DNA from: Schizochytrium sp. TIO01
Taxonomy: Eukaryota > Protista > Bigyra: Labyrinthulomycetes
Assembly: GCA_004764695.1 (NCBI GenBank)
Contig: SMSO01000022.1
Span: forward strand, 1-31,783
Length of the DNA stretch: 31,783 nucleotides
Reading direction: 5' to 3'
The position numbers and the translations under genes were made by a program. How positions within the stretch are numbered: the first letter of the stretch is position 1; the number at the start of each line of letters is the position of its first letter. Shown in pieces: positions 1 to 16,840 of the stretch. Below the pieces are notes generated by a model. That model worked only from the letters and a program-made list of their open reading frames with translations, made no database searches and was not told where the DNA came from.

Positions 1-270
1 TAACCTAACCTAACCTAACCTAACCTAACCTAACCTAACCTAACCTAACCTAACCTAACCTAACCTAACCTAACCTAACCTAACCTAACCTAACCTAACC
101 TAACCTAACCTAACCTAACCTAACCTAACCTAACCTAACCTAACCTAACCTAACCTAACCTAACCTAACCTAACCTAACCTAACCTAACCTAACCTAACC
201 TAACCTAACCTAACCTAACCTAACCTAACCTAACCTAACCTAACCTAACCTAACCTAACCTAACCTAACC
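1..270 (-). repeat. Telomeric repeat (TAACC)54 = (TTAGG)n on the minus strand
   Basis: Perfect 5-mer array from base 1, C-rich strand 5', as expected for a left chromosome end. Confidence 0.98.
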
Positions 271-476
271 TTACCTAACCTTACCTAACCTTACCTAACC
301 TTACCTAACCTTACCTAACCTTACCTAACCTTACCTAACCTTACCTAACCTTACCTAACCTTACCTAACCTTACCTAACCTTACCTAACCTTACCGAACC
401 TTACCGAACCTTACCGAACCTAACCTTACCGAACCTAACCTTACCTAACCTACTATCATTCACCTAACCTTACCTA
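271..476 (-). repeat. Variant/degenerate proximal telomeric repeats
   Basis: (TTACCTAACC)x12 at 271-390, (TTACCGAACC)x3 at 391-420, then mixed TAACC/TTACC/GAACC decaying to ~476. Confidence 0.95.
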
Positions 477-744
477 TTATTATACATTATATTTATTAAT
501 GATTTTACAATAAAAAGTTTAATGAAGAATTTAAAATATTTTCTTTTAAAAATTAAAAAGATTTTATGCGCCTGCTGACATTCGTGGATATGGGAGACTT
601 CAATAAGAACAGTATATAATATGATGGAAGTCCTTTGTCTAATTTGTAGAACTATTTTTTCACCACAATTCAATGTTGATCGTCGATGAATTGTGAAGCG
701 TTCTAGTGGTGCTTGTAGAAAAGTTCTACCTATTTCATTGATAG

Positions 745-831
745 TGTCAAGAGATAATCTATATATGGGACCGGGGTATACTAGGTATTGACGAGTGGTC
801 ATTAGTCACGCCTTTTTATAGCCCCTTAACA
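745..831 (+). mobile_element. Solo LTR of TRIM-A (87 bp), inverted relative to the full element
   Basis: TGTCAAGAG...CCCCTTAACA is the exact reverse complement of 1880-1966 and 2157-2243. TG...CA ends. Flanks GATAG/ATATC do not form a TSD. Confidence 0.93.
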
Positions 832-1879
832 ATATCTTTCCCCGTTGTTGAGAAAATGAGTCTTATACTAAACAATTTATTCTCTGTCCTGCTCACAAAA
901 TAGAGTGACAACTTGGAGCTTCTTTTCTCAAACTTAAAAGAAGATTTTCTCTCATAAATCAAATGAGGCCACCTCAACAAGCCATGCCTTATCCAGTGGT
1001 TCTTCTAGAAAAGTTCTGCTTATTCTACTCATAGAGTTAGAACACTACTAAATTCGGTTCCTCCCCCCTATTAATAATATGGGAGACTAAGAAATGTCTT
1101 TCAAAAGTCAATAAAACATACTTTAAATTTTATTTTTTCTGAACCAACACATCTACCCTGTTGCAAATGAAAACTGCTTTCCAACGGTACCACTCGATGA
1201 TTAATATATTACTCCATTGTTGAGAAAATGAATCTTATACTAACCATTTAATTCTCTGTCCTGCTCACAAAATAGAGTGACAACTTGGAGCTTCTTTTCT
1301 CAAGCTTGCAAGAAGAATTTCTCTCATAAATTAAATGCGAACATCTCAGCAATTAATTTCCTATCGATTGGTTCTTCCATAAAAGTTCTGTTTATTCTTC
1401 TCAAAGAGTTAGATCACTACTAAACTTGGTTTCCTTCCCCTATTAATAATATGAGAGACCAAAAATAAACTTTCAAAGGTCAGTAAAAAAACATTTCAAT
1501 ACTATTTCACCTGAGCAAACACATCTACCCTGTTGCAAATGAAAACTGCTTTCCAACGGTACCACTCGATGATTAATATATTACTCCATTGTTGAGAAAA
1601 TGAATCTTATACTAACCATTTAATTCTCTGTCCTGCTCACAAAATAGAGTGACAACTTGGAGCTTCTTTTCTCAAGCTTGCAAGAAGAATTTCTCTCATA
1701 AATTAAATGCGAACATCTCAGCAATTAATTTCCTATCGATTGGTTCTTCCATAAAAGTTCTGTTTATTCTTCTCAAAGAGTTAGATCACTACTAAACTTG
1801 GTTTCCTTCCCCTATTAATAATATGAGAGACCAAAAATAAACTTTCAAAGGTCAGTAAAAAAACATTTCAATACTATTT

Positions 1880-2243
1880 TGTTAAGGGGCTATAAAAAGG
1901 CGTGACTAATGACCACTCGTCAATACCTAGTATACCCCGGTCCCATATATAGATTATCTCTTGACACCCCCCCATTCTCTGGGCGAAAGGTTCATATTTC
2001 GGTTAGAGACTGATTCGACATCCCAGCAGGAATAGGACTCCCCTACCCCCCAGTAAGTCCTTCTTTTTCCAGGCACTTACATCATGGGGGGATCGAACCC
2101 GGGACCAACATACGGCAACTCTATCTCCTAGAGTTTCAGCTATTTGACTCTTAATCTGTTAAGGGGCTATAAAAAGGCGTGACTAATGACCACTCGTCAA
2201 TACCTAGTATACCCCGGTCCCATATATAGATTATCTCTTGACA
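1880..2243 (-). mobile_element. TRIM-A: miniature non-autonomous LTR retrotransposon, 364 bp
   Basis: Identical 87-bp LTRs (1880-1966, 2157-2243) with TG...CA ends. 5-bp TSD TATTT (1875-1879, 2244-2248). PPT AGAGAATGGGGGGG (1980-1967). PBS 2156-2141 shared with the Copia. No ORF. The empty site is visible in the neighbouring identical unit at 1503-1507. Confidence 0.95.
2141..2156 (-). promoter_or_regulatory. TRIM-A primer-binding site (half-tRNA-Lys(CUU) type)
   Basis: GATTAAGAGTCAAATA directly abuts the 5' LTR and is identical to the Copia PBS. Its complement contains GACT-CTT-AATC, the tRNA-Lys(CUU) anticodon loop. Confidence 0.8.
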
Positions 2244-2908
2244 TATTTCACCTGAGCAAACACATCTACCCTGTGGTAAATTGCATCAGCTTTCCAACGG
2301 TACCCCTCCATGATTAATATATTGCTTCATTGTTGAGAAAATTAATCCTATACTAATCATTTTATTCTTTATCCTGCCAACAAATAGAGTAACAACTTAG
2401 AGCTTCTTTTCTCAAAATTTAAAGAAGATTTTCTCTCATAAATCAAATGAGGCCACCTCAAAACTACATGCCTTATCCAGTGGTTCTTCTAGAAAAGTTC
2501 TGTTTATTCTACTCATAGATTTAGAACATTACTAAATTCGGTTCCTTCCCCCTATTAATAATATGAGAGACCAAAAATAAACTTTCAAAGGTCAGTAAAA
2601 CTATATGTTAAAAGTATTTTTTCTGAGAAAACACATCTACCCTGTTGTAAATTCAAGCAGCTTTCCAATGGTACCACTCGATGATTAATATATTATCTCA
2701 TTGTTGAGATATTGAATCTTCTACTATTCAATTTACCCTTTATCCTGCTAATAAATAGAGTAACAACTTGGAGCTTCTTTTCTCAAGCTTGCAAAAATAT
2801 TTTCAATCATAAATCAAATGTGGGCATCTCATCAATGAATTTGCTATCGATTGGTTCTTCTATAAAAGTTCTGTTTACTCTACTTATAGAGTTAAAACAC
2901 TACTAACT

Positions 2909-3490
2909 TGACAAGCGATAGCGAAGGTTGGTGACAACAAAGATCGGTTTAAACTTTAAGGCTTGTTGCTCTGTAACTTAGTTTCGGGTCTGCTGCCATC
3001 GAAGACTTTCTGCTTCGATTTTGCAGCATATAACTCGGACTCCTAGTGTTTACGCAATGTATTCACTAGTGCCTCGGACTTCTATTGTTTACCCAATGTA
3101 AACATTAGCAGCCATTTTCTTTTCCCTCTCTCTGAGAGAAACTGGTCGGCTTTTGGAAGAAGACTCCTAGCCAGAGTCTTAGTCCAAGTACAAGCCGTCC
3201 CGCGTTGGTCAACAAGTCGAACGCCATCTGTCGTTCTTCCCGTGGCCAGCGAATCAACCGTCCGTCGTTCACCTCAGGTCCCCCCTCTACTTAAGAGGGG
3301 ACCTGAACTTTCTGAGGCACACGGCTCACCAGCACCTCTTGCGTCAGACGTTTGCGCAGTGCCTCACTAGCCAGTCCAACAGTCGACCAGGTACTCAACT
3401 TACCTGCCGACTCTCTGACTGGCTCTCGTGGCACGGAACCGGGTAACGGGACAGCAGCCCCGCAGGGACGTTCCTCTCTGTGCTCCGACA
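2909..3490 (-). repeat. Copia copy 1, 3' LTR
   Basis: Direct repeat of 8313-8894, preceded on the minus strand by the PPT. Confidence 0.97.
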
Positions 3491-6400
3491 CCCCCTGCCC
3501 CCAATGCTCTGGTTGACACTCCAACAAGAATTCCATGTTGGTGCTCAACCCATTGCGGGACACGGAGCCCAGTCTCTGCAACACATTGACTCCGACAGGC
3601 TTGGTTAGAATGTCTGCCAACTGATGAGTGGTCTTGACAAAATATAAGTCAAACTCACCATTTCGCAACATGTCTCGAACAACCAACTCTCGAATGTCAA
3701 GGTGTTTGGCACGTGAGGCAAACTGATGGTTACGCAAAGTAGCCAAGGTTGACTGGCTATCGCTAATCATCATGCTGGGTTCCTTCAACTGACCACCCAA
3801 CTCAGCAAAGAGTCTTCTCATTTTGCATAAGTCTGCAGCAGCCTGAGATAACGCATACATCTCACTTTCCATGCTGCTCATCGCAATAGCAGGTTGGGAC
3901 TTGGACTTGGCCAGAATTAGGCTACCTCCAAGAAAGATCATCCAACCACTCGTACTACTGCGAGTACTTATGCAATCCGCCCACGACGCGTCAACGTTAC
4001 ACTTCAAGTTAAGTTCTGACTCCTTAACTCCAGTCAGTGTGAACGTTTGACCCATGGTCTTCTTGATGTAACCATATGCACGTTCAAGCTCTTTCATATG
4101 CTCAGGCCCATTGCTGTGCAAGTGTCGAGAGAGAAGACGGACTGTATTTCTCAATTCAGGGCGAACATTGCATAGGTACACCAAGCAGCCTACCATGTTC
4201 CGGTAGCGGTCCTGCGACTCTTTGCCTTCGAGGAATGGTAGTTGTACATTCGGAGTACTCGGACTTCTGGCTGTGTGCACACCTTCAAGACCAAAGCGAG
4301 TGAGTATACTTTGTTCATACTCAGCCATGTCGAAGGTGACAGTTCTCGCAGTAGCATCGAACTTCCATGTCATACCAAGAAGACGGCCTTGCTGTTGATC
4401 AACAGTGATGCCTATATCGTTCTTCTGCAAGTGAAGAATCAGCTTCTTGATAAAGAGTTCGGTACCAAAGACCACCATGTCATCTACGTAGATGATCAAC
4501 ATCAGGTCACTACAAGTGAACATGCACGGTGCCGTATCACATGCCTTGAGTCCAAAACTCTCAAGGATTCCTCGAATGTGCAGATACCAGTCCAGACTCG
4601 CACTGGCAAGGCCGTAGCAGGCCTTGTTAAGCTTGACAACATGACCAGGTGGAACATTTAACATACGGGACACTTCTTTGGATGGACGCATGAACACATC
4701 ACGGTCCAACTTGGGATGGAGGAAGGCTTGCTTGGCATCGATGGTCATCATGACCCAATCTTTGTGACTCAAGCCCATAACAATTCCCATAAAGACCTCT
4801 GTCATGCTGGCAGTGGGGGATGAGAACTCCCCCGGAGTGAAACCCTTTTCATAGTTTCCACGCATGCACAGACGCATCTTCATTCGTCCCGAAGACTTCA
4901 CTTTGCCAGCCCAAATGGTCGGCAGAATCTCACCAGTCTTCTTTGCAACAGCTTCCTTAACAAATCCGTCAAAGGTATTATGGCGTTTCATACCTTCGAT
5001 CTCGGCTTCCGCAGCTCGGAGCCAGAGGGTTTGTTCAGCACGTGGTAGCTTTGCAATCTGTCCAAAATGTTCAGGTGTCGTCAGCTTACTCAAGTCTGTA
5101 CCTTCCGGAGCGTAGACCTTGTCAATGTACATGTCCAGAGGATCATCAGCAATCAAGTCATCAATCTCTACATCTTTCAACAAACGTTCAGGAGTAGAAA
5201 GAATCTTACGGCGTCTTTTCGCAGCATCAGATTGAGCCATGAGGGCGGCATTGGTGCGAGGACGAAGGCGTGTTGGTAGGATATTCGCTTGCGCTTCTTG
5301 AGAGGTAGGCTTAACAGCAGGTAGCATACCATTGCCATAGCGAACATTATTATGAATCACCACGTTTCCTTCGTCAGACGAGTCTTCATCCACAACAGCT
5401 GAGTCCCCCACATCACCGGATGCATCTTCTTCAGCGTTAAGGTCAGGCTCGTCTTCGTCACCACTATCCTCCAAAGAGACAAGGTCTTCCACATGTTGAG
5501 CCACATTGGTGTCTTCCACTGCTGCATCTTCTTCTTCATAAACAGGTGCTGCATCTGATCCAGCAATAGTAGACACGTCATCCCAGTCATCAGACTTTGC
5601 TAAAGTGTCTAGTGCTTCTCCCCCCTGGAGTGATGGGGAAACCTGAGGAGAAGAAGAGACAGGGTCAAGGCCACGCGACTGCGCAGTGGCCAGAGCAAAG
5701 GCCTCCTCCGGATGATCTTGCGGAGAAGGAAACGTATACTCAAAGAAGGTTGCGGTACGGCGATACACAAGCTTGTGTGTATCCAGCATGAAAAATATAG
5801 ATGTACCAAACGTGTGAGTATCAGAAGGTCCTAAATAAATCCCAGAACGAGCTCGGCCACTGAACTTAGACTTTTCCAGCGGGGTTCCAGGGTGAGCACG
5901 ATGAACCAACGAGTAACACCCAAAAACACGAAGAGACGATAGGTCAGGACGCTGGCCAGTTCCAAGTTCATACGGAGACTTCCCCCCAGACGATGGAGGG
6001 ATATGACTAAGCACATAAGCGGCCATGTGAATAGCATAAGGCCAGAACTTGGTGGGAAGTTTCGTTTCAGCCATTGCTGCTTGAGCAAGAGGAACAACAC
6101 TTCCAATCGCTCGTTCAGCAATACCATTTCCCCAGTGTTCATGCGCTGCACACGCATGAATTGGCCATTGACGACGTGTCATGACCGCTTCAAACTCATC
6201 CGCAAGAAAGGCATTATCGGCATAAACCTGCACATGTGGTGAGATTTCTCCACCCTTGGACCACTTTGCGACAAAATGGTCGAACGCATCCAAAAGCGAT
6301 TCCGCAGTAAGGTCCTTGACAAACTCCACAAAGATCTCTTTCGTGAACACATCACGAAAGAGAATAAAGTATCGATGGCCACCGATACTCATAACTTTCT

Positions 6401-8267
6401 TGCCACTGGCGTCAATCGATACCCCCTGTCTGGGACCCTCTACTCTTTGTACGTGAGGTCCACTTGGCACAGCTAAAAGACGGGATTTCGAGAGTCCACA
6501 CGCAGGACAAGCACGACTTTCTTCGTCAAGCTTGACATGAAAGTTGTCCACATTCTTCTCAATGTCCTGGAGTCGAGAGACTCCCACATGACAGAGACGA
6601 CGATGAGCAAGCTCAACCGGCAAAGTCTTCTTTCCTGGGAAACCTTTTGGCTTGGGTTTCACAGTCTCCAAGACTTCTTGTTGCAGTTCCTGGGGAACAT
6701 CTTTGTCCCCCTTACTCGTCGGAGTTACCTCCTCAACTTCATGTTCTTGCGGAACGAAATATTCCGCTGGAACACGAAGTAATCCACCGTTGGTGATCAG
6801 CTTGATCACCAACTTCTCCTTGGGCTTAACCAAAGTCCAAGGTTTGTTGACTCCAGATTCAATATAAATGCCTTCTGCCTCCAAAGCATCACGGCCTAAG
6901 AGAGTAACGGCAAGTCCCGGGGCATATAGGGCATTTCGAACCTTTAGGTAGCGCAGCCTACAACCTTCAGTAATGACCTTGATTTTCAGGGTACCGCGAT
7001 GAGTGGCAATCAAAGGTCCGCCCTTGGCAATGTTGATCTCCACTTGATCCGAAGTGCTGAGCTTTTCGACACCAACTAACATGTCCAAGTTGTGGACTAG
7101 TACGTCAGTTGCTCCAGTGTCAACAAGAACATGTCCTCGCTCCGCAAGTTCATGGGAATCAGAAAAGTAGGCCGAATTCGATGCCTTCCTCATGCGCTGA
7201 TGTTCCCAAGTAGAGATGGCATGCTTCAGACCTTCTGGCACATTGGCTTGCCAGTCAGGGTCAATGTCTTTCTCCAGAGTTTGGCACTCTGCGACAGTAT
7301 GGCCATCATTCTTGAGGCAGCGAAAACAGAAGAGGTTCTTCTTTCTCGAGCGCTTCGGTCCTTGGGCAACGAAAGCGGTTCGTTGCTTTCCACTAGTCGG
7401 GCCTGCTCCACGATAGGCAGATGACTCAAGTCTAGTAGTACTTGGAGTAGGTTGAGCCAAAGACTTTCCCTGACCTTCAAGTCCTTGCAGCGTTGACTTG
7501 ATCATCTGCATCAGCTTGATGGGATCCACCGAGTCTTGTGTCTCCGTGAATTGAAGCACAACACTTTCCACAGCAGGAATGTAAGTGGGGGCATTGTTCT
7601 TCACAATCATAAAGGTCACAAGGTTGATTGCCTCTTGTGGATCGGATACGCGAAGCTTCGCGTGAAGCTTCTGCATTTCGATCATGTACGATTGATATCC
7701 TTCAGATCCTTTCGAGGGATCCCACGATAGGATTGACTGCTTGTTGATGGTTTCAACCATCCGCGACGGTTTGCTCCGAGCGTTTACCTTCACCAGGTTG
7801 TACAACGCATGTATTCCCATCGTAGGGTTCACATTGCCATCTTGGTGAAGAACTCCTATAAACATCTCGGCTCCAAACCTAAGTACTTCGTATAGTACCA
7901 TGTCCACAGTATTATTCCACCCATTGGGTAGGTTCGTGTTACGCATGGGCATCCCATTCATATTGACCATTGGTCTCCAGTTGAGCGTCCAATGGCTCTC
8001 TCCAATTCGGACTGAGAAGTTGAAGAGCATAAACACCGACAGTGCATTCCAGAAGGTCTCAAATCCTTCCGCCGTAGCGTCTTCAAGCTTTACCTTGTCC
8101 AGTCCCTTCCACGAGGGGGCAAGCGCTTGCCCCACTCTGGCTCCCATCGGGAGTTCGGCGGTCTCTACCGCAGGCGCCGCCCTCATCGGCGTGCCATTCA
8201 ACCCACGACCAACTCGCCCACGCGGCGGTGTCATATCATCAGCCTCAAAATCCTCTTGGCGATTCAT
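3291..8267 (-). CDS. Copia Gag-Pol polyprotein (Gag-protease-integrase-RT-RNase H), 1658 aa from the first ATG
   Basis: Zn knuckle CFRCLKNDGHTVAEC; protease VDTGAT; HHCC AHRRLCH...CPAC; integrase SIDAS/YADNA/NGIAER; RT IDAKQAFL, LNKACYGL, YVDD; RNase H VDASWAD...ADILTK. IN before RT is Copia order. The ORF track starts at GTG 8285; first ATG is 8267. Confidence 0.97.
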   Translation of the reverse strand: MNRQEDFEADDMTPPRGRVGRGLNGTPMRAAPAVETAELPMGARVGQALAPSWKGLDKVKLEDATAEGFETFWNALSVFMLFNFSVRIGESHWTLNWRPMVNMNGMPMRNTNLPNGWNNTVDMVLYEVLRFGAEMFIGVLHQDGNVNPTMGIHALYNLVKVNARSKPSRMVETINKQSILSWDPSKGSEGYQSYMIEMQKLHAKLRVSDPQEAINLVTFMIVKNNAPTYIPAVESVVLQFTETQDSVDPIKLMQMIKSTLQGLEGQGKSLAQPTPSTTRLESSAYRGAGPTSGKQRTAFVAQGPKRSRKKNLFCFRCLKNDGHTVAECQTLEKDIDPDWQANVPEGLKHAISTWEHQRMRKASNSAYFSDSHELAERGHVLVDTGATDVLVHNLDMLVGVEKLSTSDQVEINIAKGGPLIATHRGTLKIKVITEGCRLRYLKVRNALYAPGLAVTLLGRDALEAEGIYIESGVNKPWTLVKPKEKLVIKLITNGGLLRVPAEYFVPQEHEVEEVTPTSKGDKDVPQELQQEVLETVKPKPKGFPGKKTLPVELAHRRLCHVGVSRLQDIEKNVDNFHVKLDEESRACPACGLSKSRLLAVPSGPHVQRVEGPRQGVSIDASGKKVMSIGGHRYFILFRDVFTKEIFVEFVKDLTAESLLDAFDHFVAKWSKGGEISPHVQVYADNAFLADEFEAVMTRRQWPIHACAAHEHWGNGIAERAIGSVVPLAQAAMAETKLPTKFWPYAIHMAAYVLSHIPPSSGGKSPYELGTGQRPDLSSLRVFGCYSLVHRAHPGTPLEKSKFSGRARSGIYLGPSDTHTFGTSIFFMLDTHKLVYRRTATFFEYTFPSPQDHPEEAFALATAQSRGLDPVSSSPQVSPSLQGGEALDTLAKSDDWDDVSTIAGSDAAPVYEEEDAAVEDTNVAQHVEDLVSLEDSGDEDEPDLNAEEDASGDVGDSAVVDEDSSDEGNVVIHNNVRYGNGMLPAVKPTSQEAQANILPTRLRPRTNAALMAQSDAAKRRRKILSTPERLLKDVEIDDLIADDPLDMYIDKVYAPEGTDLSKLTTPEHFGQIAKLPRAEQTLWLRAAEAEIEGMKRHNTFDGFVKEAVAKKTGEILPTIWAGKVKSSGRMKMRLCMRGNYEKGFTPGEFSSPTASMTEVFMGIVMGLSHKDWVMMTIDAKQAFLHPKLDRDVFMRPSKEVSRMLNVPPGHVVKLNKACYGLASASLDWYLHIRGILESFGLKACDTAPCMFTCSDLMLIIYVDDMVVFGTELFIKKLILHLQKNDIGITVDQQQGRLLGMTWKFDATARTVTFDMAEYEQSILTRFGLEGVHTARSPSTPNVQLPFLEGKESQDRYRNMVGCLVYLCNVRPELRNTVRLLSRHLHSNGPEHMKELERAYGYIKKTMGQTFTLTGVKESELNLKCNVDASWADCISTRSSTSGWMIFLGGSLILAKSKSQPAIAMSSMESEMYALSQAAADLCKMRRLFAELGGQLKEPSMMISDSQSTLATLRNHQFASRAKHLDIRELVVRDMLRNGEFDLYFVKTTHQLADILTKPVGVNVLQRLGSVSRNGLSTNMEFLLECQPEHWGQGVSEHREERPCGAAVPLPGSVPREPVRESAGKLSTWSTVGLASEALRKRLTQEVLVSRVPQKVQVPS
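3491..3502 (-). promoter_or_regulatory. Copia copy 1 polypurine tract
   Basis: GGGGGCAGGGGG immediately before the 3' LTR TGTC. Confidence 0.88.
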
Positions 8268-8296
8268 TGTTCTCCAGTCACTCACGGCTTCAAGCT

Positions 8297-8312
8297 TATT
8301 TGACTCTTAATC
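8297..8312 (-). promoter_or_regulatory. Copia copy 1 primer-binding site (half-tRNA-Lys(CUU) type)
   Basis: GATTAAGAGTCAAATA abuts the 5' LTR. No TGG start. Complementary to a tRNA-Lys(CUU) anticodon arm ending at position 40. Confidence 0.8.
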
Positions 8313-8894
8313 TGACAAGCGATAGCGAAGGTTGGTGACAACAAAGATCGGTTTAAACTTTAAGGCTTGTTGCTCTGTAACTTAGTTTCGGGTCTGCTGC
8401 CATCGAAGACTTTCTGCTTCGATTTTGCAGCATATAACTCGGACTCCTAGTGTTTACGCAATGTATTCACTAGTGCCTCGGACTTCTATTGTTTACCCAA
8501 TGTAAACATTAGCAGCCATTTTCTTTTCCCTCTCTCTGAGAGAAACTGGTCGGCTTTTGGAAGAAGACTCCTAGCCAGAGTCTTAGTCCAAGTACAAGAC
8601 GTCCCGCGTTGGTCAACAAGTCGAACGCCATCTGTCGTTCTTCCCGTGGCCAGCGAATCAACCGTCCGTCGTTCACCTCAGGTCCCCCCTCTACTTAAGA
8701 GGGGACCTGAACTTTCTGAGGCACACGGCTCACCAGCACCTCTTGCGTCAGACGTTTGCGCAGTGCCTCACTAGCCAGTCCAACAGTCGACCAGGTACTC
8801 AACTTACCTGCCGACTCTCTGACTGGCTCTCGTGGCACGGAACCGGGTAACGGGACAGCAGCCCCGCAGGGACGTTCCTCTCTGTGCTCCGACA
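8313..8894 (-). repeat. Copia copy 1, 5' LTR
   Basis: Direct repeat of 2909-3490, followed by PBS on the minus strand. Confidence 0.97.
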
Positions 8895-9759
8895 TAACTC
8901 GGTTCCTTCCCCATATTAATAATATGAGAGACCAAAAATTAACTTTCAAAGGTCAGTAAAACTATATGTTTAAAGTATTGTTTCTGAGAAATTTCATCTA
9001 CCCTGTTGTAATTTCAAGCAGCTTTCCAATGGTACCACTCCATGATTTATATGTTTCCCCGTTGTTGAGAAAATGAATCTTGTACAAATCTTTTAATTAT
9101 TTCTTTTGTTATCAACTAGAGTGACAACTTAGAGCTTCTTTTCTCAAGCTTACAAGAAGCTTTTCTGTCATAAATCAAACGTAGCCATCTCTACAATTCA
9201 TGCGCTATTGAGTGGTGCTTCTAGAAAAGCTCTGTATATTCTACTCATAGAGTTAGAACACTACTCAACTCGGCTCCCTTCCTATTAATAATATGAGAGA
9301 CCAAAGAATAAATTTCAAAGGTCAGTAGAAACACATTTTAAGAATATTTCAGCTAAGCAAACACATCAACCCTATTGTACATTGCCCCAGCTTTCCAACA
9401 GTACCCCTCCACGATTAATATTTTTCCCTGTTGTTGAGAAAATGAATTTTATACTAGCCGTTCAATTCTCTATCCTGCTCACCAATAGAGTGACAACTTG
9501 GGGCTTTTTTTCTCCAGCTTGCAAGAACATATTTTCTCATAAATCAAATGCACTCATCTTAACACTTCATAAACTATCGAATGATGTCTGTAGAAAAGCT
9601 CTGTCGATTGTATTTATAGAGATACAACACTACTAACCCAGTTCCTTCCCCCTATTAATAATATGAGAGACAAAAAAATTAACTTTTAAAGGTCAGTCAA
9701 ATGCATGTTAAAAGTATTTTTTCTGAGAAAACACATTCAATCTGTTGTAAATTCAACCA

Positions 9760-10394
9760 TGTCGCGAGGACTGTTGCTCGGTTCTTATATGCAGGTCTTA
9801 TATTAGGTGGGAACACGGGTAAGCGTTTCCCACAGTAGAGGGAAAAGGGAAAGAAAAACAGAAGAGACGGGAATCGAACTCAAGACGTAAGAGACCTTTT
9901 AATTATTTTAACCAAAAGGTGGTCTTAGCACTAAGCCGAATATTGTTGCTTCGCTGTACCTTATATAGACAATAGCTCCCAACAATACACCCCTTACGGA
10001 CGTGAGAAACGATTTGTTCTTTCTGTGAAAGTTGAAGTTTATTAGTACGTACCACTGGAGCTATGACTGTGAATGTCCAGCTGGCGGACACCCCTGACTG
10101 TGAGGGGGGTACGACTAAGCTTTTCACTGCTCTACCCCAGAGTGCAAGCACTTTGGGCCCATAACCTGTCGCGAGGACTGTTGCTCGGTTCTTATATGCA
10201 GGTCTTATATTAGGTGGGAACACGGGTAAGCGTTTCCCACAGTAGAGGGAAAAGGGAAAGAAAAACAGAAGAGACGGGAATCGAACTCAAGACGTAAGAG
10301 ACCTTTTAATTATTTTAACCAAAAGGTGGTCTTAGCACTAAGCCGAATATTGTTGCTTCGCTGTACCTTATATAGACAATAGCTCCCAACAATA
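9760..10394 (-). mobile_element. TRIM-B: second miniature non-autonomous LTR retrotransposon, 635 bp
   Basis: Apparently identical 228-bp LTRs (9760-9987, 10167-10394). TSD AACCA (9755-9759, 10395-10399). 179-bp interior. PBS GGTTATGGGCCCA and PPT-like TAAGGGGTG. Sense-strand termini 5'-TA...CA-3'. Confidence 0.93.
10154..10166 (-). promoter_or_regulatory. TRIM-B primer-binding site (half-tRNA-iMet type)
   Basis: GGTTATGGGCCCA abuts the 5' LTR. Its complement TGGGCCCATAACC is the initiator tRNA-Met anticodon arm, as used by Drosophila copia-type elements. Confidence 0.88.
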
Positions 10395-11240
10395 AACCAG
10401 CTTTCCAATGGTAGACTCCAATAATTAATATATTATCCCGTTGTTAAGAAAGTGAATCTTATACTAACCATTTAATTCTCTGTCCTGCTCACAAACAGAA
10501 TGATAACTTGGAGCTTCTTTTCTCAAGCTTGACAGGGTCGTTTTTCTCACAAATCAAATTCGGGTATCTCAGCAATTCATGTTCTATCAAGAGGTGCCTA
10601 TAGCAAAGTCCTTTCTATTCTATTCATTGAGTTAGAGCACTACTAAACTCACTTCTTTCTCCCTATTATTGATATGGGCGATTAAGAAATAACTTTCAAA
10701 GGTCAGTAAAAATAAATTTAAAAATATTTCGCCTGAGAAAACACATCTACCCTGTGTCAAATCTTAACAGCTTTCTAACGGTACCATCTGATGAGTAATA
10801 TCTTTTCCCGTTGTTGAGAAAATGAACCTTATACTAATCACTTTTCTGCTCACAAATATGACAAGCGATAGCGAAGGTTGGTGACAACAAAGATCGGTTT
10901 AAACTTTAAGGCTTGTTGCTCTGCAACTTAGTTTCGGGTCTGCTGCCATCGAAGACTTTCTGCTTCGATTTTGCAGCATATAACTCGGACTCCTAGTGTT
11001 TACGTAATGTATTCACTAGTGCCTCGGACTTCTATTGTTTACTCAATGTAAACATTAGCGGCCATTTTCTTTTCCCTCTCTCTGAGAGAAACTGGTCGGC
11101 TTTTGGAAGAAGACTCCTAGCCAGAGTCTTAGTCCAAGTACAAGCCGTCCCGCGTTGGTCAACAAGTCGAACGCCATCTGTTGTTCTTCCCGTGGCCAGC
11201 GAATCAACCGTCCGTCGTTCACCTCAGGTCCCCCCTCTAC

Positions 11241-14200
11241 TTAAGAGGGGACCTGAAATTTCTGAGGCACACGGCTCACCAGCACCTCTTGCGTCAGACG
11301 TTTGCGCAGTGCCTCACTAGCCAGTCCATCAGTCGACCAGGTACTCAACTTACCTACCGACTCTCTGACTGGCTCTCGTAGCACGGAACCGGGTAACGGG
11401 ACAGCAGCCCCGCAGGGACGTTCCTCTCTGTGCTCCGACACCCCCTGCCCCCAATGCTCTGGTTGACACTCCAACAAGAATTCCATGTTGGTGCTCAACC
11501 CATTGCGGGACACGGAGCCCAGTCTCTGCAACACATTGACTCCGACAGGCTTGGTCAGAATGTCTGCCAACTGATGAGTGGTCTTGACAAAATATAAGTC
11601 AAACTCACCATTTCGCAACATGTCTCGAACAACCAACTCTCGAATGTCAAGGTGTTTGGCACGTGAGGCAAACTGATGGTTACGCAAAGTAGCCAAGGTT
11701 GACTGGCTATCGCTAATCATCATGCTGGGTTCCTTCAACTGACCACCCAACTCAGCAAAGAGTCTTCTCATTTTGCATAAGTCTGCAGCAGCCTGAGATA
11801 ACGCATACATCTCACTTTCCATGCTGCTCATCGCAATAGCAGGTTGGGACTTGGACTTGGCCAGAATTAGGCTACCTCCAAGAAAGATCATCCAACCACT
11901 CGTACTACTGCGAGTACTTATGCAATCCGCCCACGACGCGTCAACGTAACACTTCAAGTTAAGTTCTGACTCCTTAACTCCAGTCAGTGTAAACGTTTGA
12001 CCCATGGTCTTCTTGATGTAGCCATATGCACGTTCAAGCTCTTTCATATGCTCAGGCCCATTGCTGTGCAAGTGTCGAGAGAGAAGACGGACTGTGTTTC
12101 TCAACTCAGGGCGAACGTTGCAGAGGTACACCAAGCAGCCTACCATGTTCCGGTAGCGGTCCTGCGACTCTTTGCCCTCAAGGAATGGTAGTTGTACATT
12201 AGGAGTACTCGGACTTCTGGCTGTGTGCACACCTTCAAGACCAAAGCGAGTGAGTATACTTTGTTCATACTCAGCCATGTCGAAGGTGACAGTTCTCGCA
12301 GTAGCATCGAACTTCCATGTCATACCAAGAAGACGGCCTTGCTGTTGATCAACAGTGATGCCTATATCGTTCTTCTGCAAGTGAAGAATCAGCTTCTTGA
12401 TAAAGAGTTCGGTACCAAAGACCACCATGTCATCTACATAGATGATCAACATCAGGTCACTACAAGTGAACATGCACGGTGCCGTATCACATGCCTTGAG
12501 TCCAAAACTCTCAAGGATTCCTCGAATGTGCAGATACCAGTCCAGACTCGCACTGGCAAGGCCGTAGCAGGCCTTGTTAAGCTTGACAACATGACCAGGT
12601 GGAACATTTAACATACGGGACACTTCTTTGGATGGACGCATGAACACATCACGGTCCAGCTTGGGATGAAGGAAGGCTTGCTTGGCATCGATGGTCATCA
12701 TGACCCAATCTTTGTGACTCAAGCCCATAACAATTCCCATAAAGACCTCTGTCATGCTGGCAGTGGGGGATGAGAACTCCCCCGGAGTGAAACCCTTTTC
12801 ATAGTTTCCACGCATGCACAGACGCATCTTCATTCGTCCCGAAGACTTCACTTTGCCAGCCCAAATGGTCGGCAGAATCTCACCAGTCTTCTTTGCAACA
12901 GCTTCCTTAACAAATCCGTCAAAGGTATTATGGCGTTTCATACCTTCGATCTCGGCTTCCGCAGCTCGGAGCCAGAGAGTTTGTTCAGCAGGTGGTAGCT
13001 TTGCAATCTGTCCAAAATGTTCAGGTGTCGTCAGCTTACTCAAGTCTGTACCTTCAGGAGCGTAGACCTTGTCAATGTACATGTCCAGAGGATCATCAGC
13101 AATCAAGTCATCAATCTCTACATCTTTCAACAAACGTTCAGGAGTAGAAAGAATCTTACGGCGTCTTTTCGCAGCATCAGATTGAGCCATGAGGGCGGCA
13201 TTGGTGCGAGGACGAAGGCGTGTTGGTAGGATATTCGCTTGCGCTTCTTGAGAGGTAGGCTTAACAGCAGGTAGCATACCATTGCCATAGCGAACATTGT
13301 TATGAATCACCACGTTTCCTTCGTCAGACGAGTCTTCATCCACAACAGCTGAGTCCCCCACATCACCGGATGCATCTTCTTCAGCGTTAAGGTCAGGCTC
13401 GTCTTCGTCACCACTATCCTCCAAAGAGACAAGGTCTTCCACATGATGAGCCACATTGGTGTCTTCCACTGCTGCATCTTCTTCTTCATAACCGGGTGCT
13501 GCATCTGATCCAGCAATAGTAGACACGTCATCCCAGTCATCAGACTTTGCTAAAGTGTCTAGTGCTTCTCCCCCCTGGAGTGATGGGGAAACCTGAGGAG
13601 AAGAAGAGACAGGGTCAAGGCCACGCGACTGCGCAGTGGCCAGAGCAAAGGCCTCCTCCGGATGATCTTGCGGAGAAGGAAACGTATACTCAAAGAAGGT
13701 TGCGGTACGGCGATACACAAGCTTGTGTGTATCCAGCATGAAAAATATAGACGTACCAAACGTGTGAGTATCAGAAGGTCCTAAATAAATCCCAGAACGA
13801 GCTCGGCCACTGAACTTAGACTTTTCAAGCGGGGTTCCAGGGTGAGCACGATGAACCAACGAGTAACACCCAAAAACACGAAGAGACGATAGGTCAGGAC
13901 GCTGGCCAGTTCCAAGTTCATACGGAGACTTCCCCCCAGACGATGGAGGGATACGACTAAGCACATGAGCGGCCATGTGAATAGCATAAGGCCAGAACTT
14001 GGTGGGAAGTTTCGTTTCAGCCATTGCTGCTTGAGCAAGAGGAACAACACTTCCAATCGCTCGTTCGGCAATACCATTTCCCCAGTGTTCATGCGCTGCG
14101 CACGCATGAATTGGCCATTGACGACGTGTCATGACTGCTTCAAACTCATCCGCAAGAAAGGCATTGTCGGCATAAATCTGCACATGTGGCGAGATTTCTC

Positions 14201-16217
14201 CACCCTTGGACCACTTTGCGACAAAATGGTCGAACGCATCCAAAAGCGATTCCGCAGTAAGGTCCTTGACGAACTCCACAAAGATCTCTTTCGTGAACAC
14301 ATCACGAAAGAGAATAAAGTATCGATGGCCACCGATACTCATAACTTTCTTGCCACTGGCGTCAATCGATACCCCCTGTCTGGGACCCTCTACTCTTTGT
14401 ACGTGAGGTCCACTTGGCACAGCTAAAAGACGGGATTTCGAGAGTCCACACGCAGGACAAGCACGACTTTCTTCGTCAATCTTGACATGAAAGTTGTCCA
14501 CATTCTTCTCAATGTCCTGGAGTCGAGAGACTCCCACATGACAGAGACGACGATGAGCAAGCTCAACCGGCAAAGTCTTCTTTCCTGGGAAACCTTTTGG
14601 CTTGGGTTTCACAGTCTCCAAGACTTCTTGTTGCAGTTCCTGGGGAACATCTTTGTCCCCCTTACTCGTCGGAGTTACCTCCTCAACTTCATGTTCTTGC
14701 GGAACGAAATATTCCGCTGGAACACGAAGTAATCCACCGTTGGTGATCAGCTTGATCACCAACTTCTCCTTGGGCTTAACCAAAGTCCAAGGTTTGTTGA
14801 CTCCAGATTCAATATAAATGCCTTCTGCCTCCAAAGCATCACGGCCTAAGAGAGTAACGGCAAGTCCCGGGGCATATAGGGCATTTCGAACCTTTAGGTA
14901 GCGCAGTCTGCAACCTTCAGTAATGACCTTGATTTTCAGGGTACCGCGATGAGTGGCAATCAAAGGTCCGCCCTTGGCAATGTTGATCTCCACTTGATCC
15001 GAAGTGCTGAGCTTTTCGACACCAACTAACATGTCCAAGTTGTGGACTAGTACGTCAGTTGCTCCAGTGTCGACAAGAACATGTCCTCGCTCCGCAAGTT
15101 CATGGGAATCAGAAAAGTAGGCCGAATTCGATGCCTTCCTCATGCGCTGATGTTCCCAAGTAGAAATGGCATGCTTCAGACCTTCTGGCACATTGGCTTG
15201 CCAGTCAGGGTCAATGTCTTTCTCCAGAGTTTGGCACTCTGCGACAGTATGGCCATCATTCTTGAGGCAGCGAAAACAGAAGAGGTTCTTCTTTCTCGAG
15301 CGCTTCGGTCCTTGGGCAACGAAAGCGGTTCGTTGCTTTCCACTAGCCGGGCCTGCTCCACGATAGCCAGATGACTCAAGTCTAGTAGCACTTGGAGTAG
15401 GTTGAGCCAAAGACTTTCCCTGACCTTCAAGTCCTTGCAGCGTTGATTTGATCATCTGCATCAGCTTGATGGGATCCACCGAGTCTTGTGTCTCCGTGAA
15501 TTGAAGCACAACACTTTCCACAGCAGGTATGTAAGTGGGGGCATTGTTCTTCACAATCATAAAGGTCACAAGGTTGATTGCCTCTTGTGGATCGGATACG
15601 CGAAGCTTCGCGTGAAGCTTCTGCATTTCGATCATGTACGATTGATATCCTTCAGATCCTTTCGAGGGGTCCCACGATAGGATTGACTGCTTGTTGATGG
15701 TTTCAACCATCCGCGACGGTTTGCTCCGAGCGTTTACCTTCACCAGGTTGTACAACGCATGTATTCCCATCGTAGGATTCACATTGCCATCCTGGTGAAG
15801 AACTCCTATAAACATCTCGGCTCCAAACCTAAGTACTTCGTATAGTACCATGTCCACAGTATTATTCCACCCATTGGGTAGGTTCGTGTTACGCATGGGC
15901 ATCCCATTCATATTGACCATTGGTCTCCAGTTGAGCGTCCAATGGCTCTCTCCAATTCGGACTGAGAAGTTGAAGAGCATAAACACCGACAGTGCATTCC
16001 AGAAGGTCTCAAATCCTTCCGCCGTAGCGTCTTCAAGCTTTACCTTGTCCAGTCCCTTCCACGAGGGGGCAAGCGCTTGCCCCACTCTGGCTCCCATCGG
16101 GAGTTCGGCGGTCTCTACCGCAGGCGCCGCCCTCATCGGCGTGCCATTCAACCCACGACCAACTCGCCCACGCGGCGGTGTCATATCATCAGCCTCAAAA
16201 TCCTCTTGGCGATTCAT
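11241..16217 (-). CDS. Copia Gag-Pol polyprotein, copy 2
   Basis: Same length and motifs as copy 1, about 15 amino-acid differences, no stop or frameshift. GTG at 16235; first ATG at 16217. Confidence 0.97.
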   Translation of the reverse strand: MNRQEDFEADDMTPPRGRVGRGLNGTPMRAAPAVETAELPMGARVGQALAPSWKGLDKVKLEDATAEGFETFWNALSVFMLFNFSVRIGESHWTLNWRPMVNMNGMPMRNTNLPNGWNNTVDMVLYEVLRFGAEMFIGVLHQDGNVNPTMGIHALYNLVKVNARSKPSRMVETINKQSILSWDPSKGSEGYQSYMIEMQKLHAKLRVSDPQEAINLVTFMIVKNNAPTYIPAVESVVLQFTETQDSVDPIKLMQMIKSTLQGLEGQGKSLAQPTPSATRLESSGYRGAGPASGKQRTAFVAQGPKRSRKKNLFCFRCLKNDGHTVAECQTLEKDIDPDWQANVPEGLKHAISTWEHQRMRKASNSAYFSDSHELAERGHVLVDTGATDVLVHNLDMLVGVEKLSTSDQVEINIAKGGPLIATHRGTLKIKVITEGCRLRYLKVRNALYAPGLAVTLLGRDALEAEGIYIESGVNKPWTLVKPKEKLVIKLITNGGLLRVPAEYFVPQEHEVEEVTPTSKGDKDVPQELQQEVLETVKPKPKGFPGKKTLPVELAHRRLCHVGVSRLQDIEKNVDNFHVKIDEESRACPACGLSKSRLLAVPSGPHVQRVEGPRQGVSIDASGKKVMSIGGHRYFILFRDVFTKEIFVEFVKDLTAESLLDAFDHFVAKWSKGGEISPHVQIYADNAFLADEFEAVMTRRQWPIHACAAHEHWGNGIAERAIGSVVPLAQAAMAETKLPTKFWPYAIHMAAHVLSRIPPSSGGKSPYELGTGQRPDLSSLRVFGCYSLVHRAHPGTPLEKSKFSGRARSGIYLGPSDTHTFGTSIFFMLDTHKLVYRRTATFFEYTFPSPQDHPEEAFALATAQSRGLDPVSSSPQVSPSLQGGEALDTLAKSDDWDDVSTIAGSDAAPGYEEEDAAVEDTNVAHHVEDLVSLEDSGDEDEPDLNAEEDASGDVGDSAVVDEDSSDEGNVVIHNNVRYGNGMLPAVKPTSQEAQANILPTRLRPRTNAALMAQSDAAKRRRKILSTPERLLKDVEIDDLIADDPLDMYIDKVYAPEGTDLSKLTTPEHFGQIAKLPPAEQTLWLRAAEAEIEGMKRHNTFDGFVKEAVAKKTGEILPTIWAGKVKSSGRMKMRLCMRGNYEKGFTPGEFSSPTASMTEVFMGIVMGLSHKDWVMMTIDAKQAFLHPKLDRDVFMRPSKEVSRMLNVPPGHVVKLNKACYGLASASLDWYLHIRGILESFGLKACDTAPCMFTCSDLMLIIYVDDMVVFGTELFIKKLILHLQKNDIGITVDQQQGRLLGMTWKFDATARTVTFDMAEYEQSILTRFGLEGVHTARSPSTPNVQLPFLEGKESQDRYRNMVGCLVYLCNVRPELRNTVRLLSRHLHSNGPEHMKELERAYGYIKKTMGQTFTLTGVKESELNLKCYVDASWADCISTRSSTSGWMIFLGGSLILAKSKSQPAIAMSSMESEMYALSQAAADLCKMRRLFAELGGQLKEPSMMISDSQSTLATLRNHQFASRAKHLDIRELVVRDMLRNGEFDLYFVKTTHQLADILTKPVGVNVLQRLGSVSRNGLSTNMEFLLECQPEHWGQGVSEHREERPCGAAVPLPGSVLREPVRESVGKLSTWSTDGLASEALRKRLTQEVLVSRVPQKFQVPS

Positions 16218-16246
16218 TGTTCTCCAGTCACTCACGGCTTCAAGCT

Positions 16247-16262
16247 TATTTGACTCTTAATC
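16247..16262 (-). promoter_or_regulatory. Copia copy 2 primer-binding site
   Basis: Same GATTAAGAGTCAAATA abutting the 5' LTR. Confidence 0.8.
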
Positions 16263-16840
16263 TGACAAGCGATAGCGAAGGTTGGTGACAACAAAGATCG
16301 GTTTGAACTTTAAGGCTTGTTGCTCTGCAACTTAGTTTCGGGTCTGCTGCCATCGAAGACTTTCTGCTTCGATTTTGCAGCATATAACTCGGACTCCTAG
16401 TGTTTACGTAATGTATTCACTAGTGCCTCGGACTTCTATTGTTTACTCAATGTAAACATTAGCAGCCATTTTCTTTTCCCTCTCTCTGAGAGAAACTGGT
16501 CGGCTTTTGGAAGAAGACTCCTAGCCAGAGTCTTAGTCCAAGTACAAGCCGTCCCGCGTTGGTCAACGAGTCGAACGCCATCTGTCGTTCTTCCCGTGGC
16601 CAGCGAATCAACCGTCCGTCGTTCACCTCAGGTCCCCCCTCTACTTAAGAGGGGACCTGAACTTTCTGAGGCACACGGCTCACCAGCACCTCTTGCGTCA
16701 GACGTTTGCGCAGTGCCTCACTAGCCAGTTCAACAGTCGACCAGGTACTCAACTTACCTATCGGCTCTCTGACTGGCTCTCGTAGCACGGAACCGGGTAA
16801 CGGGACAGCAGCCCCGCAGGGACGTTCCTCTCTGTGCTCC

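What the first reader, a model, noticed from the sequence alone, without database searches (positions are those of the whole stretch)
8297..8312. Copia apparently primed by a half-tRNA-Lys(CUU) rather than a tRNA 3' end or half-tRNA-iMet
Seen: the 16 nt after the 5' LTR are GATTAAGAGTCAAATA in both Copia copies (8297-8312, 16247-16262) and in TRIM-A (2141-2156), with no TGG to pair with tRNA CCA. Known: eukaryotic tRNA-Lys(CUU) anticodon arms read GA-CT-CTT-AA-TC, and Drosophila copia and yeast Ty5 prime from a tRNA-iMet fragment ending in the anticodon stem. Inference: the complement ATTTGACTCTTAATC is tRNA-Lys positions ~26-40. It stops at the same position (40) as the half-iMet PBS of TRIM-B in this window, which works as an internal control. 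I do not know of a described Lys half-tRNA-primed Copia lineage, but cannot search.
Basis: partly seen in the sequence, partly recalled or inferred. Interest (0 to 1): 0.85.

Follow-up and report, generated by a model that had tools for sequence, protein, structure and literature searches.

The report
Copia retrotransposon primed by half tRNA-Lys
Two intact Copia retrotransposons and a miniature partner element at a chromosome end of a thraustochytrid protist start reverse transcription from a site that exactly matches the anticodon arm of the host's tRNA-Lys(CUU); this is a sound example of "half-tRNA" priming, but a tRNA-Lys internal priming site is already published for a fungal Copia clade.

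Summary
Observation confirmed. GATTAAGAGTCAAATA follows the terminal CA of the 5' LTR, with no spacer, in both Copia copies and in a 364-bp TRIM. All three lie on the minus strand.

The host genome has at least 26 tRNA-Lys(CUU) genes of essentially one sequence, with anticodon arm TTTGA-CTCTTAA-TCAAA. The first 14 nt of the site are a perfect complement of tRNA positions 27-40; nt 15 could form a U·G26 wobble and nt 16 mismatches.

Nine other LTR families in this genome carry a 14-nt site complementary to positions 27-40 of the host tRNA-iMet. That match exists only in the spliced tRNA, because the genes carry an intron after position 37. Self-priming is not supported. The elements are young and intact.

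Cleavage of the tRNA and priming itself remain inferred.

Novelty is limited. Donnart et al. [quoted passage not shown] Truncated-tRNA primers from Arg, Ile, Tyr, Asp and Asn are also published.

What is new is the host lineage (a labyrinthulomycete, probably Aurantiochytrium) and the autonomous/TRIM pair. Earlier first-stage notes of this scan flagged the same TRIM elsewhere in this genome.

The parts
2909..8894 (-). Copia copy 1: a complete Ty1/copia-type LTR retrotransposon of 5986 bp, inserted in the 372-bp subtelomeric satellite.
   Evidence: Self-BLAST. The 5-bp TSD AGTTA lies at 8895-8899 and 2904-2908.
8313..8894 (-). 5' LTR of copy 1 (582 bp, TGTCGG...GCTTGTCA).
   Evidence: One mismatch to the 3' LTR.
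8299..8312 (-). Primer binding site GATTAAGAGTCAAA, a perfect complement of host tRNA-Lys(CUU) positions 27-40.
3291..8267 (-). Single gag-PR-IN-RT-RH open reading frame of 1658 aa (ATG 8267-8265, TAA 3293-3291). It runs through the PPT and about 200 nt into the 3' LTR.
   Evidence: Catalytic motifs are conserved in the alignments.
3491..3510 (-). Polypurine tract region AGAGCATTGGGGGCAGGGGG, directly upstream of the 3' LTR.
   Evidence: A similar motif (CCAGAGAATGGGGGG) sits at the same place in TRIM-A.
2909..3490 (-). 3' LTR of copy 1.
10859..16840 (-). Copia copy 2, with an intact 1658-aa ORF (11241-16217) that differs from copy 1 at 15 aa. Its LTRs have 9 mismatches and the first bases of the 5' LTR are lost.
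16249..16262 (-). PBS of copy 2, identical to that of copy 1.
1880..2243 (-). TRIM-A: a 364-bp non-autonomous LTR element with two identical 87-bp LTRs, a 190-bp interior and no ORF. TSD AAATA at 2244-2248 and 1875-1879.
   Evidence: The genome holds 33 copies.
2143..2156 (-). PBS of TRIM-A, identical to the Copia PBS. The next bases (TA, then GCTGAA) also resemble the Copia leader.
9760..10398 (-). TRIM-B, the internal control: about 232-bp LTRs and PBS GGTTATGGGCCCAA at 10153-10166, complementary to positions 27-40 of the spliced host tRNA-iMet.

Best explanation
The 14 nt GATTAAGAGTCAAA directly after the 5' LTR are the minus-strand primer binding site of a young, probably still active Ty1/copia lineage and of its miniature non-autonomous partner, TRIM-A.

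Shown:
- The site is exactly complementary to positions 27-40 of the host's nuclear tRNA-Lys(CUU). This covers the 5' strand of the anticodon stem, the whole loop and the first two bases of the 3' strand.
- Position 40 abuts the last base of the LTR, and position 41 (A) cannot pair with that base.

Inferred:
- The primer is a 39-nt 5' fragment of tRNA-Lys(CUU) whose 3' OH is at C40. It would be made by a cut in the 3' strand of the anticodon stem, as shown experimentally for Drosophila copia and yeast Ty5 with tRNA-iMet.
- Reverse transcriptase extends it into U5-R, followed by the usual strand transfers.
- Complementarity stops at position 27, next to G26. This would fit a block at a modified G26 when the primer is copied during plus-strand synthesis.
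- TRIM-A is mobilised in trans by the Copia proteins, because it shares the PBS, a PPT-like motif and the TGTC LTR start.
For: 1. The exact 16-mer abuts the LTR end in three elements with unrelated LTRs.
2. The arm TTTGACTCTTAATCAAA occurs 26 times in the host genome, and every locus checked has a tRNA-Lys(CUU) gene of essentially one sequence there. These genes score 68 bits on Rfam tRNA. The match is 14/14 at linear nt 26-39, which is canonical 27-40.
3. The 15-nt scan of the genome found the site only in those tRNA genes, 37 element copies and one unrelated place.
4. Nine other LTR families in the genome carry TTGGGCCCATAACC-type sites. All 48 exact genomic copies of that 14-mer lie in elements. 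It equals positions 27-40 of the host tRNA-iMet only after removal of a 30-31-nt intron at 37/38. This shows that mature tRNAs set these sites, in the same 14-nt register.
5. Self-priming complementarity in either LTR is at shuffle level.
6. The elements are young and intact: LTRs with 1/582 mismatches, 5-bp TSDs and intact 1658-aa ORFs with PR, IN, RT and RNase H motifs. The family has 4 full copies plus 6 solo LTRs, all at least 97% identical.
7. Suggestive only: the 43-nt Copia leader pairs collinearly with the whole 39-nt tRNA half. The part beyond the PBS gives -25.5 kcal/mol against -17.3±3.0 for shuffles (11/1000), -16.3 for tRNA-iMet and -18.4 for tRNA-Lys(UUU).
8. Published precedent for truncated-tRNA priming in Copia: PMC6317226, PMC10886601, PMC4139406 and PMC5445492.
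Against: - There is no direct evidence for a cleaved tRNA-Lys or for priming.
- No cross-species covariation test was possible.
- The Copia and TRIM-A sites may share descent, so they are not two independent observations.
- PBS invariance across 37 copies is uninformative because all copies are young.
- tRNA-Lys(UUU) has the same arm apart from position 34, where the site's G could wobble-pair with U, so it is not excluded as a primer.
- Many TRIM-A copies sit about 2 kb from chromosome ends. They may have spread by subtelomere exchange rather than by transposition.
- The extended leader pairing is one nominal hit among 11 tests.
Confidence: 0.8

Rival explanations
1. The same site is used, but the primer comes mainly from tRNA-Lys(UUU), or from both Lys isoacceptors.
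For: tRNA-Lys(UUU) genes (L029, L030) have the same stem and loop apart from T at position 34. The site's G could pair with U34 as a wobble.
Against: CUU gives 14/14 Watson-Crick pairs and has at least 26 gene copies, against 3 UUU-type hits. U34 of Lys(UUU) is usually heavily modified (general knowledge). The leader beyond the PBS pairs better with the CUU 5' part (-25.5) than with the UUU part (-18.4).
Confidence: 0.08
2. Self-priming as in Tf1: the 5' end of the element's own transcript folds back on the site and is cleaved to give the primer.
For: There is no TGG, and the site abuts the LTR, as in self-priming elements.
Against: The longest Watson-Crick/GU complement to the site is 7 nt in the 582-bp Copia LTR and 6 nt in the 87-bp TRIM-A LTR. 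Neither is better than shuffles: 166/200 and 163/200 shuffles reach the observed value. A perfect 14-nt tRNA match would then be a coincidence of roughly 1e-6 (my estimate).
Confidence: 0.02
3. The site is a non-functional relic or a captured antisense tRNA-Lys fragment, and priming happens elsewhere in the leader.
For: TRIM-A also carries a tRNA-like B-box motif (GGTTCGATCC) in its interior, so tRNA-derived pieces do occur in these elements.
Against: There is no spacer to the LTR end. The 14-nt register matches nine iMet families. No conventional TGG site lies near the LTR. The elements are young, have TSDs, and all 37 copies keep the site.
Confidence: 0.04

Closest known systems
FunCo1 clade of Copia elements in filamentous ascomycetes (Donnart et al. 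2017, BMC Genomics 18:410, PMC5445492)
   Same: Its PBS, ATTAAGAGTCT, is described as complementary to an internal region of tRNA-Lys. It shares the core ATTAAGAGTC (the anticodon loop CTCTTAA plus neighbours) with the site here.
   Different: The hosts are Pezizomycotina fungi, not a stramenopile. The stem part follows a different tRNA-Lys sequence (..GTCT against ..GTCAAA). Phylogenetic relatedness to the element here was not tested. The paper compared the site with a Drosophila tRNA, not with the host's own.
Drosophila copia and yeast Ty5 (Hemivirus-type priming; Kikuchi 1986 and Ke 1999, as cited in PMC10886601)
   Same: The PBS abuts the LTR, lacks TGG, and is complementary to the anticodon stem-loop. 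The implied primer is a roughly 39-nt 5' tRNA fragment ending in the 3' strand of the anticodon stem.
   Different: Those elements use tRNA-iMet, and there the primer was shown experimentally. Here the tRNA is Lys(CUU) and the primer is inferred. The RT-RH region is only about 27-30% identical to other Copia proteins.
Puccinia Copia families and their Helenus TRIMs (Kojima 2024, PMC10886601); plant Bianca (1/2 tRNA-Ile) and Osser/Bryco/Gymco-II (1/2 tRNA-Met) (Neumann 2019, PMC6317226); Candida albicans families with tRNA-Arg(UCU) internal sites (PMC4139406)
   Same: Truncated-tRNA primers of several tRNA species. Autonomous Copia and TRIM partners share the same PBS. TSDs are 5 bp. The sites match spliced, mature tRNAs whose genes carry introns.
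   Different: None of these papers lists tRNA-Lys. Helenus carries its tRNA-like sequence in the LTR, whereas TRIM-A has only a B-box-like motif in its interior.

Membership tests
Ty1/copia LTR retrotransposon (Pseudoviridae) | Two LTRs with TG...CA ends and a 5-bp target site duplication. | tested here: met
   582-bp LTRs (TGTCGG...TTGTCA) with 1 mismatch, and TSD AGTTA.
Ty1/copia LTR retrotransposon (Pseudoviridae) | Integrase lies upstream of reverse transcriptase in the polyprotein, and the RT is of RVT_2 type. | tested here: met
   Pfam hits: Pol_BBD 377-462, gag_pre-integrs 543-591, SH3_retrovirus 766-843 and RVT_2 1112-1332. HHCC, DDE and YVDD columns are invariant in the alignment.
Half-tRNA (truncated-tRNA, Hemivirus-type) priming | The PBS abuts the 5' LTR, has no TGG, and is complementary to an internal tRNA segment ending in the 3' strand of the anticodon stem. 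| tested here: met
   14/14 complement of host tRNA-Lys(CUU) positions 27-40, with position 41 mismatched to the last LTR base. Nine iMet families use the same register.
Half-tRNA (truncated-tRNA, Hemivirus-type) priming | A cleaved 5' tRNA fragment is physically attached to minus-strand strong-stop cDNA. | not testable with these tools
   This needs VLP cDNA or small-RNA data.
Half-tRNA (truncated-tRNA, Hemivirus-type) priming | The primer is tRNA-iMet, as in the type members copia and Ty5. | tested here: not met
   The site matches tRNA-Lys(CUU), not the host tRNA-iMet.
FunCo1 Copia clade | A PBS complementary to an internal region of tRNA-Lys (ATTAAGAGTCT). | tested here: met
   10 of the 11 published bases are shared (ATTAAGAGTC). 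The last base follows the host tRNA stem.
FunCo1 Copia clade | Groups with FunCo1 in an RT/RNase H phylogeny. | not tested
   No FunCo1 sequences could be fetched. The nearest database relatives are unnamed or from other taxa.
TRIM (terminal-repeat retrotransposon in miniature) | Shorter than 1 kb, with two short LTRs, a PBS and a PPT, no coding capacity, and a TSD. | tested here: met
   TRIM-A is 364 bp with identical 87-bp LTRs, a PBS, a PPT-like AGAGAATGGGGGGG and TSD AAATA.
Self-priming LTR elements (Tf1/Sushi-like) | The PBS is complementary to the 5' end of the element's own transcript, within the LTR. | tested here: not met
   The longest complement is 6-7 nt, which is at shuffle level.

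The most novel reading that the evidence does not exclude
This would be the first Copia lineage outside fungi, and the first in stramenopiles, that primes from a tRNA-Lys(CUU) 5' half.

It would come with a dedicated TRIM partner. Its leader would anneal to almost the whole 39-nt tRNA half rather than to 14 nt only.

Together with the nine iMet-half families, it would make truncated-tRNA priming the main Copia priming mode seen in this genome. It would also tie these elements to the build of the 'LORE-TEARS' subtelomeres of Aurantiochytrium.
Probability: 0.45. Interest if true: 0.4.

Novelty: new member of a known kind. Interest (0 to 1): 0.3.

Why it matters
It gives a clean, internally controlled computational case that the half-tRNA priming register (positions 27-40) is independent of which tRNA is used. 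The case rests on a Lys family and nine iMet families in one genome. The iMet sites match only the spliced tRNA.

It extends tRNA-Lys half priming from ascomycete fungi to a labyrinthulomycete.

It also shows that the subtelomeres of an Aurantiochytrium-like genome hold young LTR elements and TRIMs. The genome preprint describes these regions only as repeats without database similarity and never mentions LTR elements.

It does not change what is known about the mechanism.

Tried and rejected
- Arthropod origin, suggested by the TTAGG telomere. Rejected: the best protein relative is from Hondaea fermentalgiana, and the telomere and repeat layout match the Aurantiochytrium limacinum preprint.
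- Searching for host tRNA-iMet genes with contiguous anticodon-arm patterns failed. All 48 exact hits were elements. The genes were found once a gap for an intron was allowed.
- The whole-genome tRNA census by RF00005 scored only 63 of 2948 candidates, so not every tRNA could be ranked against the site.
- Rfam found no tRNA or other family in TRIM-A.
- Extended pairing of the tRNA 5' part with leaders was not significant for TRIM-A or for any of the nine iMet families.
- Relatives elsewhere: none in metagenome or viral contigs. An alignment of six distant relatives was too divergent to search with.
- The 82 metagenome hits to the 17-mer are at roughly the number I would expect by chance. The 78 loci held after I set aside two contigs labelled human-gut metagenome encode no Copia.
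- Cluster names gave no useful taxonomy.

Full report
**What is there.** The window starts with about 480 bp of (CCTAA)n telomere, followed by 372-bp satellite repeats. Self-comparison shows two copies of one LTR retrotransposon on the minus strand.
- Copy 1 spans 2909-8894. Its 582-bp LTRs differ at one base, its TSD is AGTTA, its PPT is ...GGGGGCAGGGGG, and it has one intact 1658-aa ORF.
- Copy 2 spans 10859-16840. It is 98.9% identical to copy 1, also has an intact ORF, has 9 LTR mismatches, and has lost the first bases of its 5' LTR.
- Pfam and alignments give the order PR, IN, RT (RVT_2), RNase H with conserved catalytic residues, so this is a Ty1/copia element.
- TRIM-A (1880-2243) is a 364-bp element with identical 87-bp LTRs, TSD AAATA and no ORF.

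**The observation.** GATTAAGAGTCAAATA occurs exactly three times, against a chance expectation of 0.01. Each time it starts at the base after the LTR's terminal CA. No TGG follows the LTR. The coordinates are right; the strand is minus.

A pattern search of the window's own genome (64 Mb, 37 contigs) for TTTGACTCTTAATCAAA gave 26 exact hits.
- At every locus checked, ARAGORN calls a 72-nt tRNA-Lys(CUU) gene at the match. The hits include a tandem array on contig 35 (14 hits at about 208-bp spacing) and repeated Lys-Leu-Gln clusters.
- The genes are essentially one sequence and score 68 bits on Rfam tRNA.
- The reverse complement of the site matches linear nt 26-39 of the tRNA, which is canonical 27-40, at 14 of 14 positions.
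- Position 41 (A) faces the last LTR base (A). The paired segment therefore ends exactly at the LTR border, and the implied primer is 39 nt long.
- tRNA-Lys(UUU) has the same arm apart from position 34.
- A 15-nt scan (the 14-mer plus C, G or T) finds the site only in the tRNA genes, in 37 element copies and at one unrelated place.

TRIM-B (9760-10398) has GGTTATGGGCCCAA directly after its LTR.
- The complementary 14-mer occurs 48 times in the genome. Every copy lies next to an LTR end, and they belong to nine distinct families.
- No contiguous tRNA gene contains it.
- Allowing a gap revealed six tRNA-iMet genes on contig 6 with a 30-31-nt intron after position 37. These genes have A1:U72, the GGG/CCC stem and an ATCGAAA T-loop.
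- The element sites therefore equal positions 27-40 of the spliced tRNA only.
- In this genome, then, LTR elements carry 14-nt sites set by mature tRNAs in a fixed 27-40 register, and the Lys site follows it. In none of the families does the next base pair with G26 in Watson-Crick fashion.

**Alternatives.**
- Self-priming is not supported. The best complement to the site in either LTR is 6-7 nt, no better than shuffles.
- A chance match of 14 nt to one register of some 50 tRNA species is of the order of 1e-6 (my estimate).
- A relic or captured fragment is unlikely, given the zero spacing, the shared register and the youth of the elements.
- tRNA-Lys(UUU) cannot be excluded as a second primer.

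**Further observations.**
- TRIM-A and the Copia have unrelated LTRs. They share the site, the next few bases, a PPT-like motif (CCAGAG.AT.GGGGG) and the TGTC LTR start. This fits mobilisation of TRIM-A by the Copia proteins.
- The family is small and young: 4 full copies and 6 solo LTRs, all at least 97% identical, plus 33 TRIM-A copies. All carry an unchanged site.
- Many copies are subtelomeric, so some may have spread by exchange between chromosome ends.
- The 43-nt Copia leader can pair collinearly with the whole 39-nt tRNA half, at -43.9 kcal/mol. The part beyond the PBS is stronger than dinucleotide shuffles (11/1000) and stronger than with tRNA-iMet or tRNA-Lys(UUU). TRIM-A and the nine iMet families show nothing similar, so I treat this as suggestive only.

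**Host and relatives.**
- The only close protein relative is a 'Transposon, partial' from Hondaea fermentalgiana, at 61% identity over the RT-RH part and 51% overall.
- The iMet-half Copias of the same genome are only 27-28% identical. The best hits in a 1.8-billion-protein library are at most 38% identical.
- TTAGG telomeres of about 500 bp and subtelomeric repeats of about 366, 406 and 529 bp match the Aurantiochytrium limacinum assembly (bioRxiv 10.1101/2023.06.15.545109). That text never mentions LTR elements.
- Cross-species comparison of sites was not possible.

**Comparison with what is known.**
- Priming from a tRNA cut in the anticodon stem is the mode demonstrated for copia and Ty5 with tRNA-iMet.
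- Other tRNAs are already on record: 1/2 tRNA-Ile in plant Bianca, next to 1/2 tRNA-Met in Osser, Bryco and Gymco-II (PMC6317226).
- Tyr, Ile, Asp, Asn and iMet are used in Puccinia Copia families and their Helenus TRIMs, with sites matching spliced tRNAs (PMC10886601).
- Most to the point, Donnart et al. [quoted passage not shown] The core ATTAAGAGTC is the same as here.

**Verdict.** The biochemical steps remain inferred. This is a new member of a known kind: a tRNA-Lys(CUU) half-primed Copia, with a cognate TRIM, in a labyrinthulomycete. Interest is modest.

Noticed in passing
L072-L077 (G000 contig 6, 316.4-320.2 kb); window 10153-10166: All six host tRNA-iMet genes found carry a 30-31-nt intron after position 37. 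The 14-mer TTGGGCCCATAACC occurs 48 times in the genome, only in LTR elements, and it matches the tRNA only after splicing.
   Followed up: yes
window 9760-10398; G000 contig 36 at 2,342,034-2,344,470; contig 6 at 5,808/6,215: TRIM-B-type sites recur at 406-407-bp spacing in tandem arrays. This is the unit length of the 'Group 1 LORE-TEARS' subtelomeric repeats of Aurantiochytrium limacinum, which were described as lacking similarity to known sequences. Those repeats may be tandem TRIM arrays, as an earlier first-stage note also proposed.
   Followed up: partly
window 3291-3510 (minus strand): The Copia ORF reads through the polypurine tract and about 200 nt into the 3' LTR. The residues encoded by the PPT and the LTR start (PEHWGQGVSEH) are conserved in the Hondaea homologue.
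   Followed up: partly
window 2080-2115 (minus strand), inside TRIM-A: The TRIM-A interior holds a tRNA T-arm or B-box-like motif (GGTCCCGGGTTCGATCCCC). Neither Rfam nor ARAGORN calls a tRNA there. Whether it acts as a Pol III promoter, as proposed for Helenus TRIMs, is open.
   Followed up: partly
window 1-480 and 831-2910, 8896-9760: The window begins with a TTAGG-type telomere whose inner units vary (TTAGGTAAGG, TTCGGTAAGG). It is followed by 372-bp satellite units, into which both Copia copy 1 and TRIM-A inserted.
   Followed up: partly
window 770-850: A further stretch matching the TRIM-A LTR in the opposite orientation lies near the telomere. It is probably a solo LTR.
   Followed up: no
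L112 (G000 contig 3, 208,000-216,800), plus strand 3-7418: A 2472-aa open frame has SAM and LRR domains and a C-terminal NEL (novel E3 ligase) domain. That domain is best known from bacterial effectors. The frame lies beside an LTR element with an iMet-half site.
   Followed up: no
G000 contig 35, 885.9-888.7 kb (L011-L024): A tandem array of tRNA-Lys(CUU) genes (14 pattern hits at about 208-bp spacing). Lys-Leu(AAG)-Gln(CUG) tRNA clusters are also repeated on many contigs, several of them near contig ends.
   Followed up: partly
G000 contigs 15 and 37: These contigs hold tRNA sets repeated at a 41,149-bp offset. That suggests a concatenated circular organelle genome of about 41 kb.
   Followed up: no
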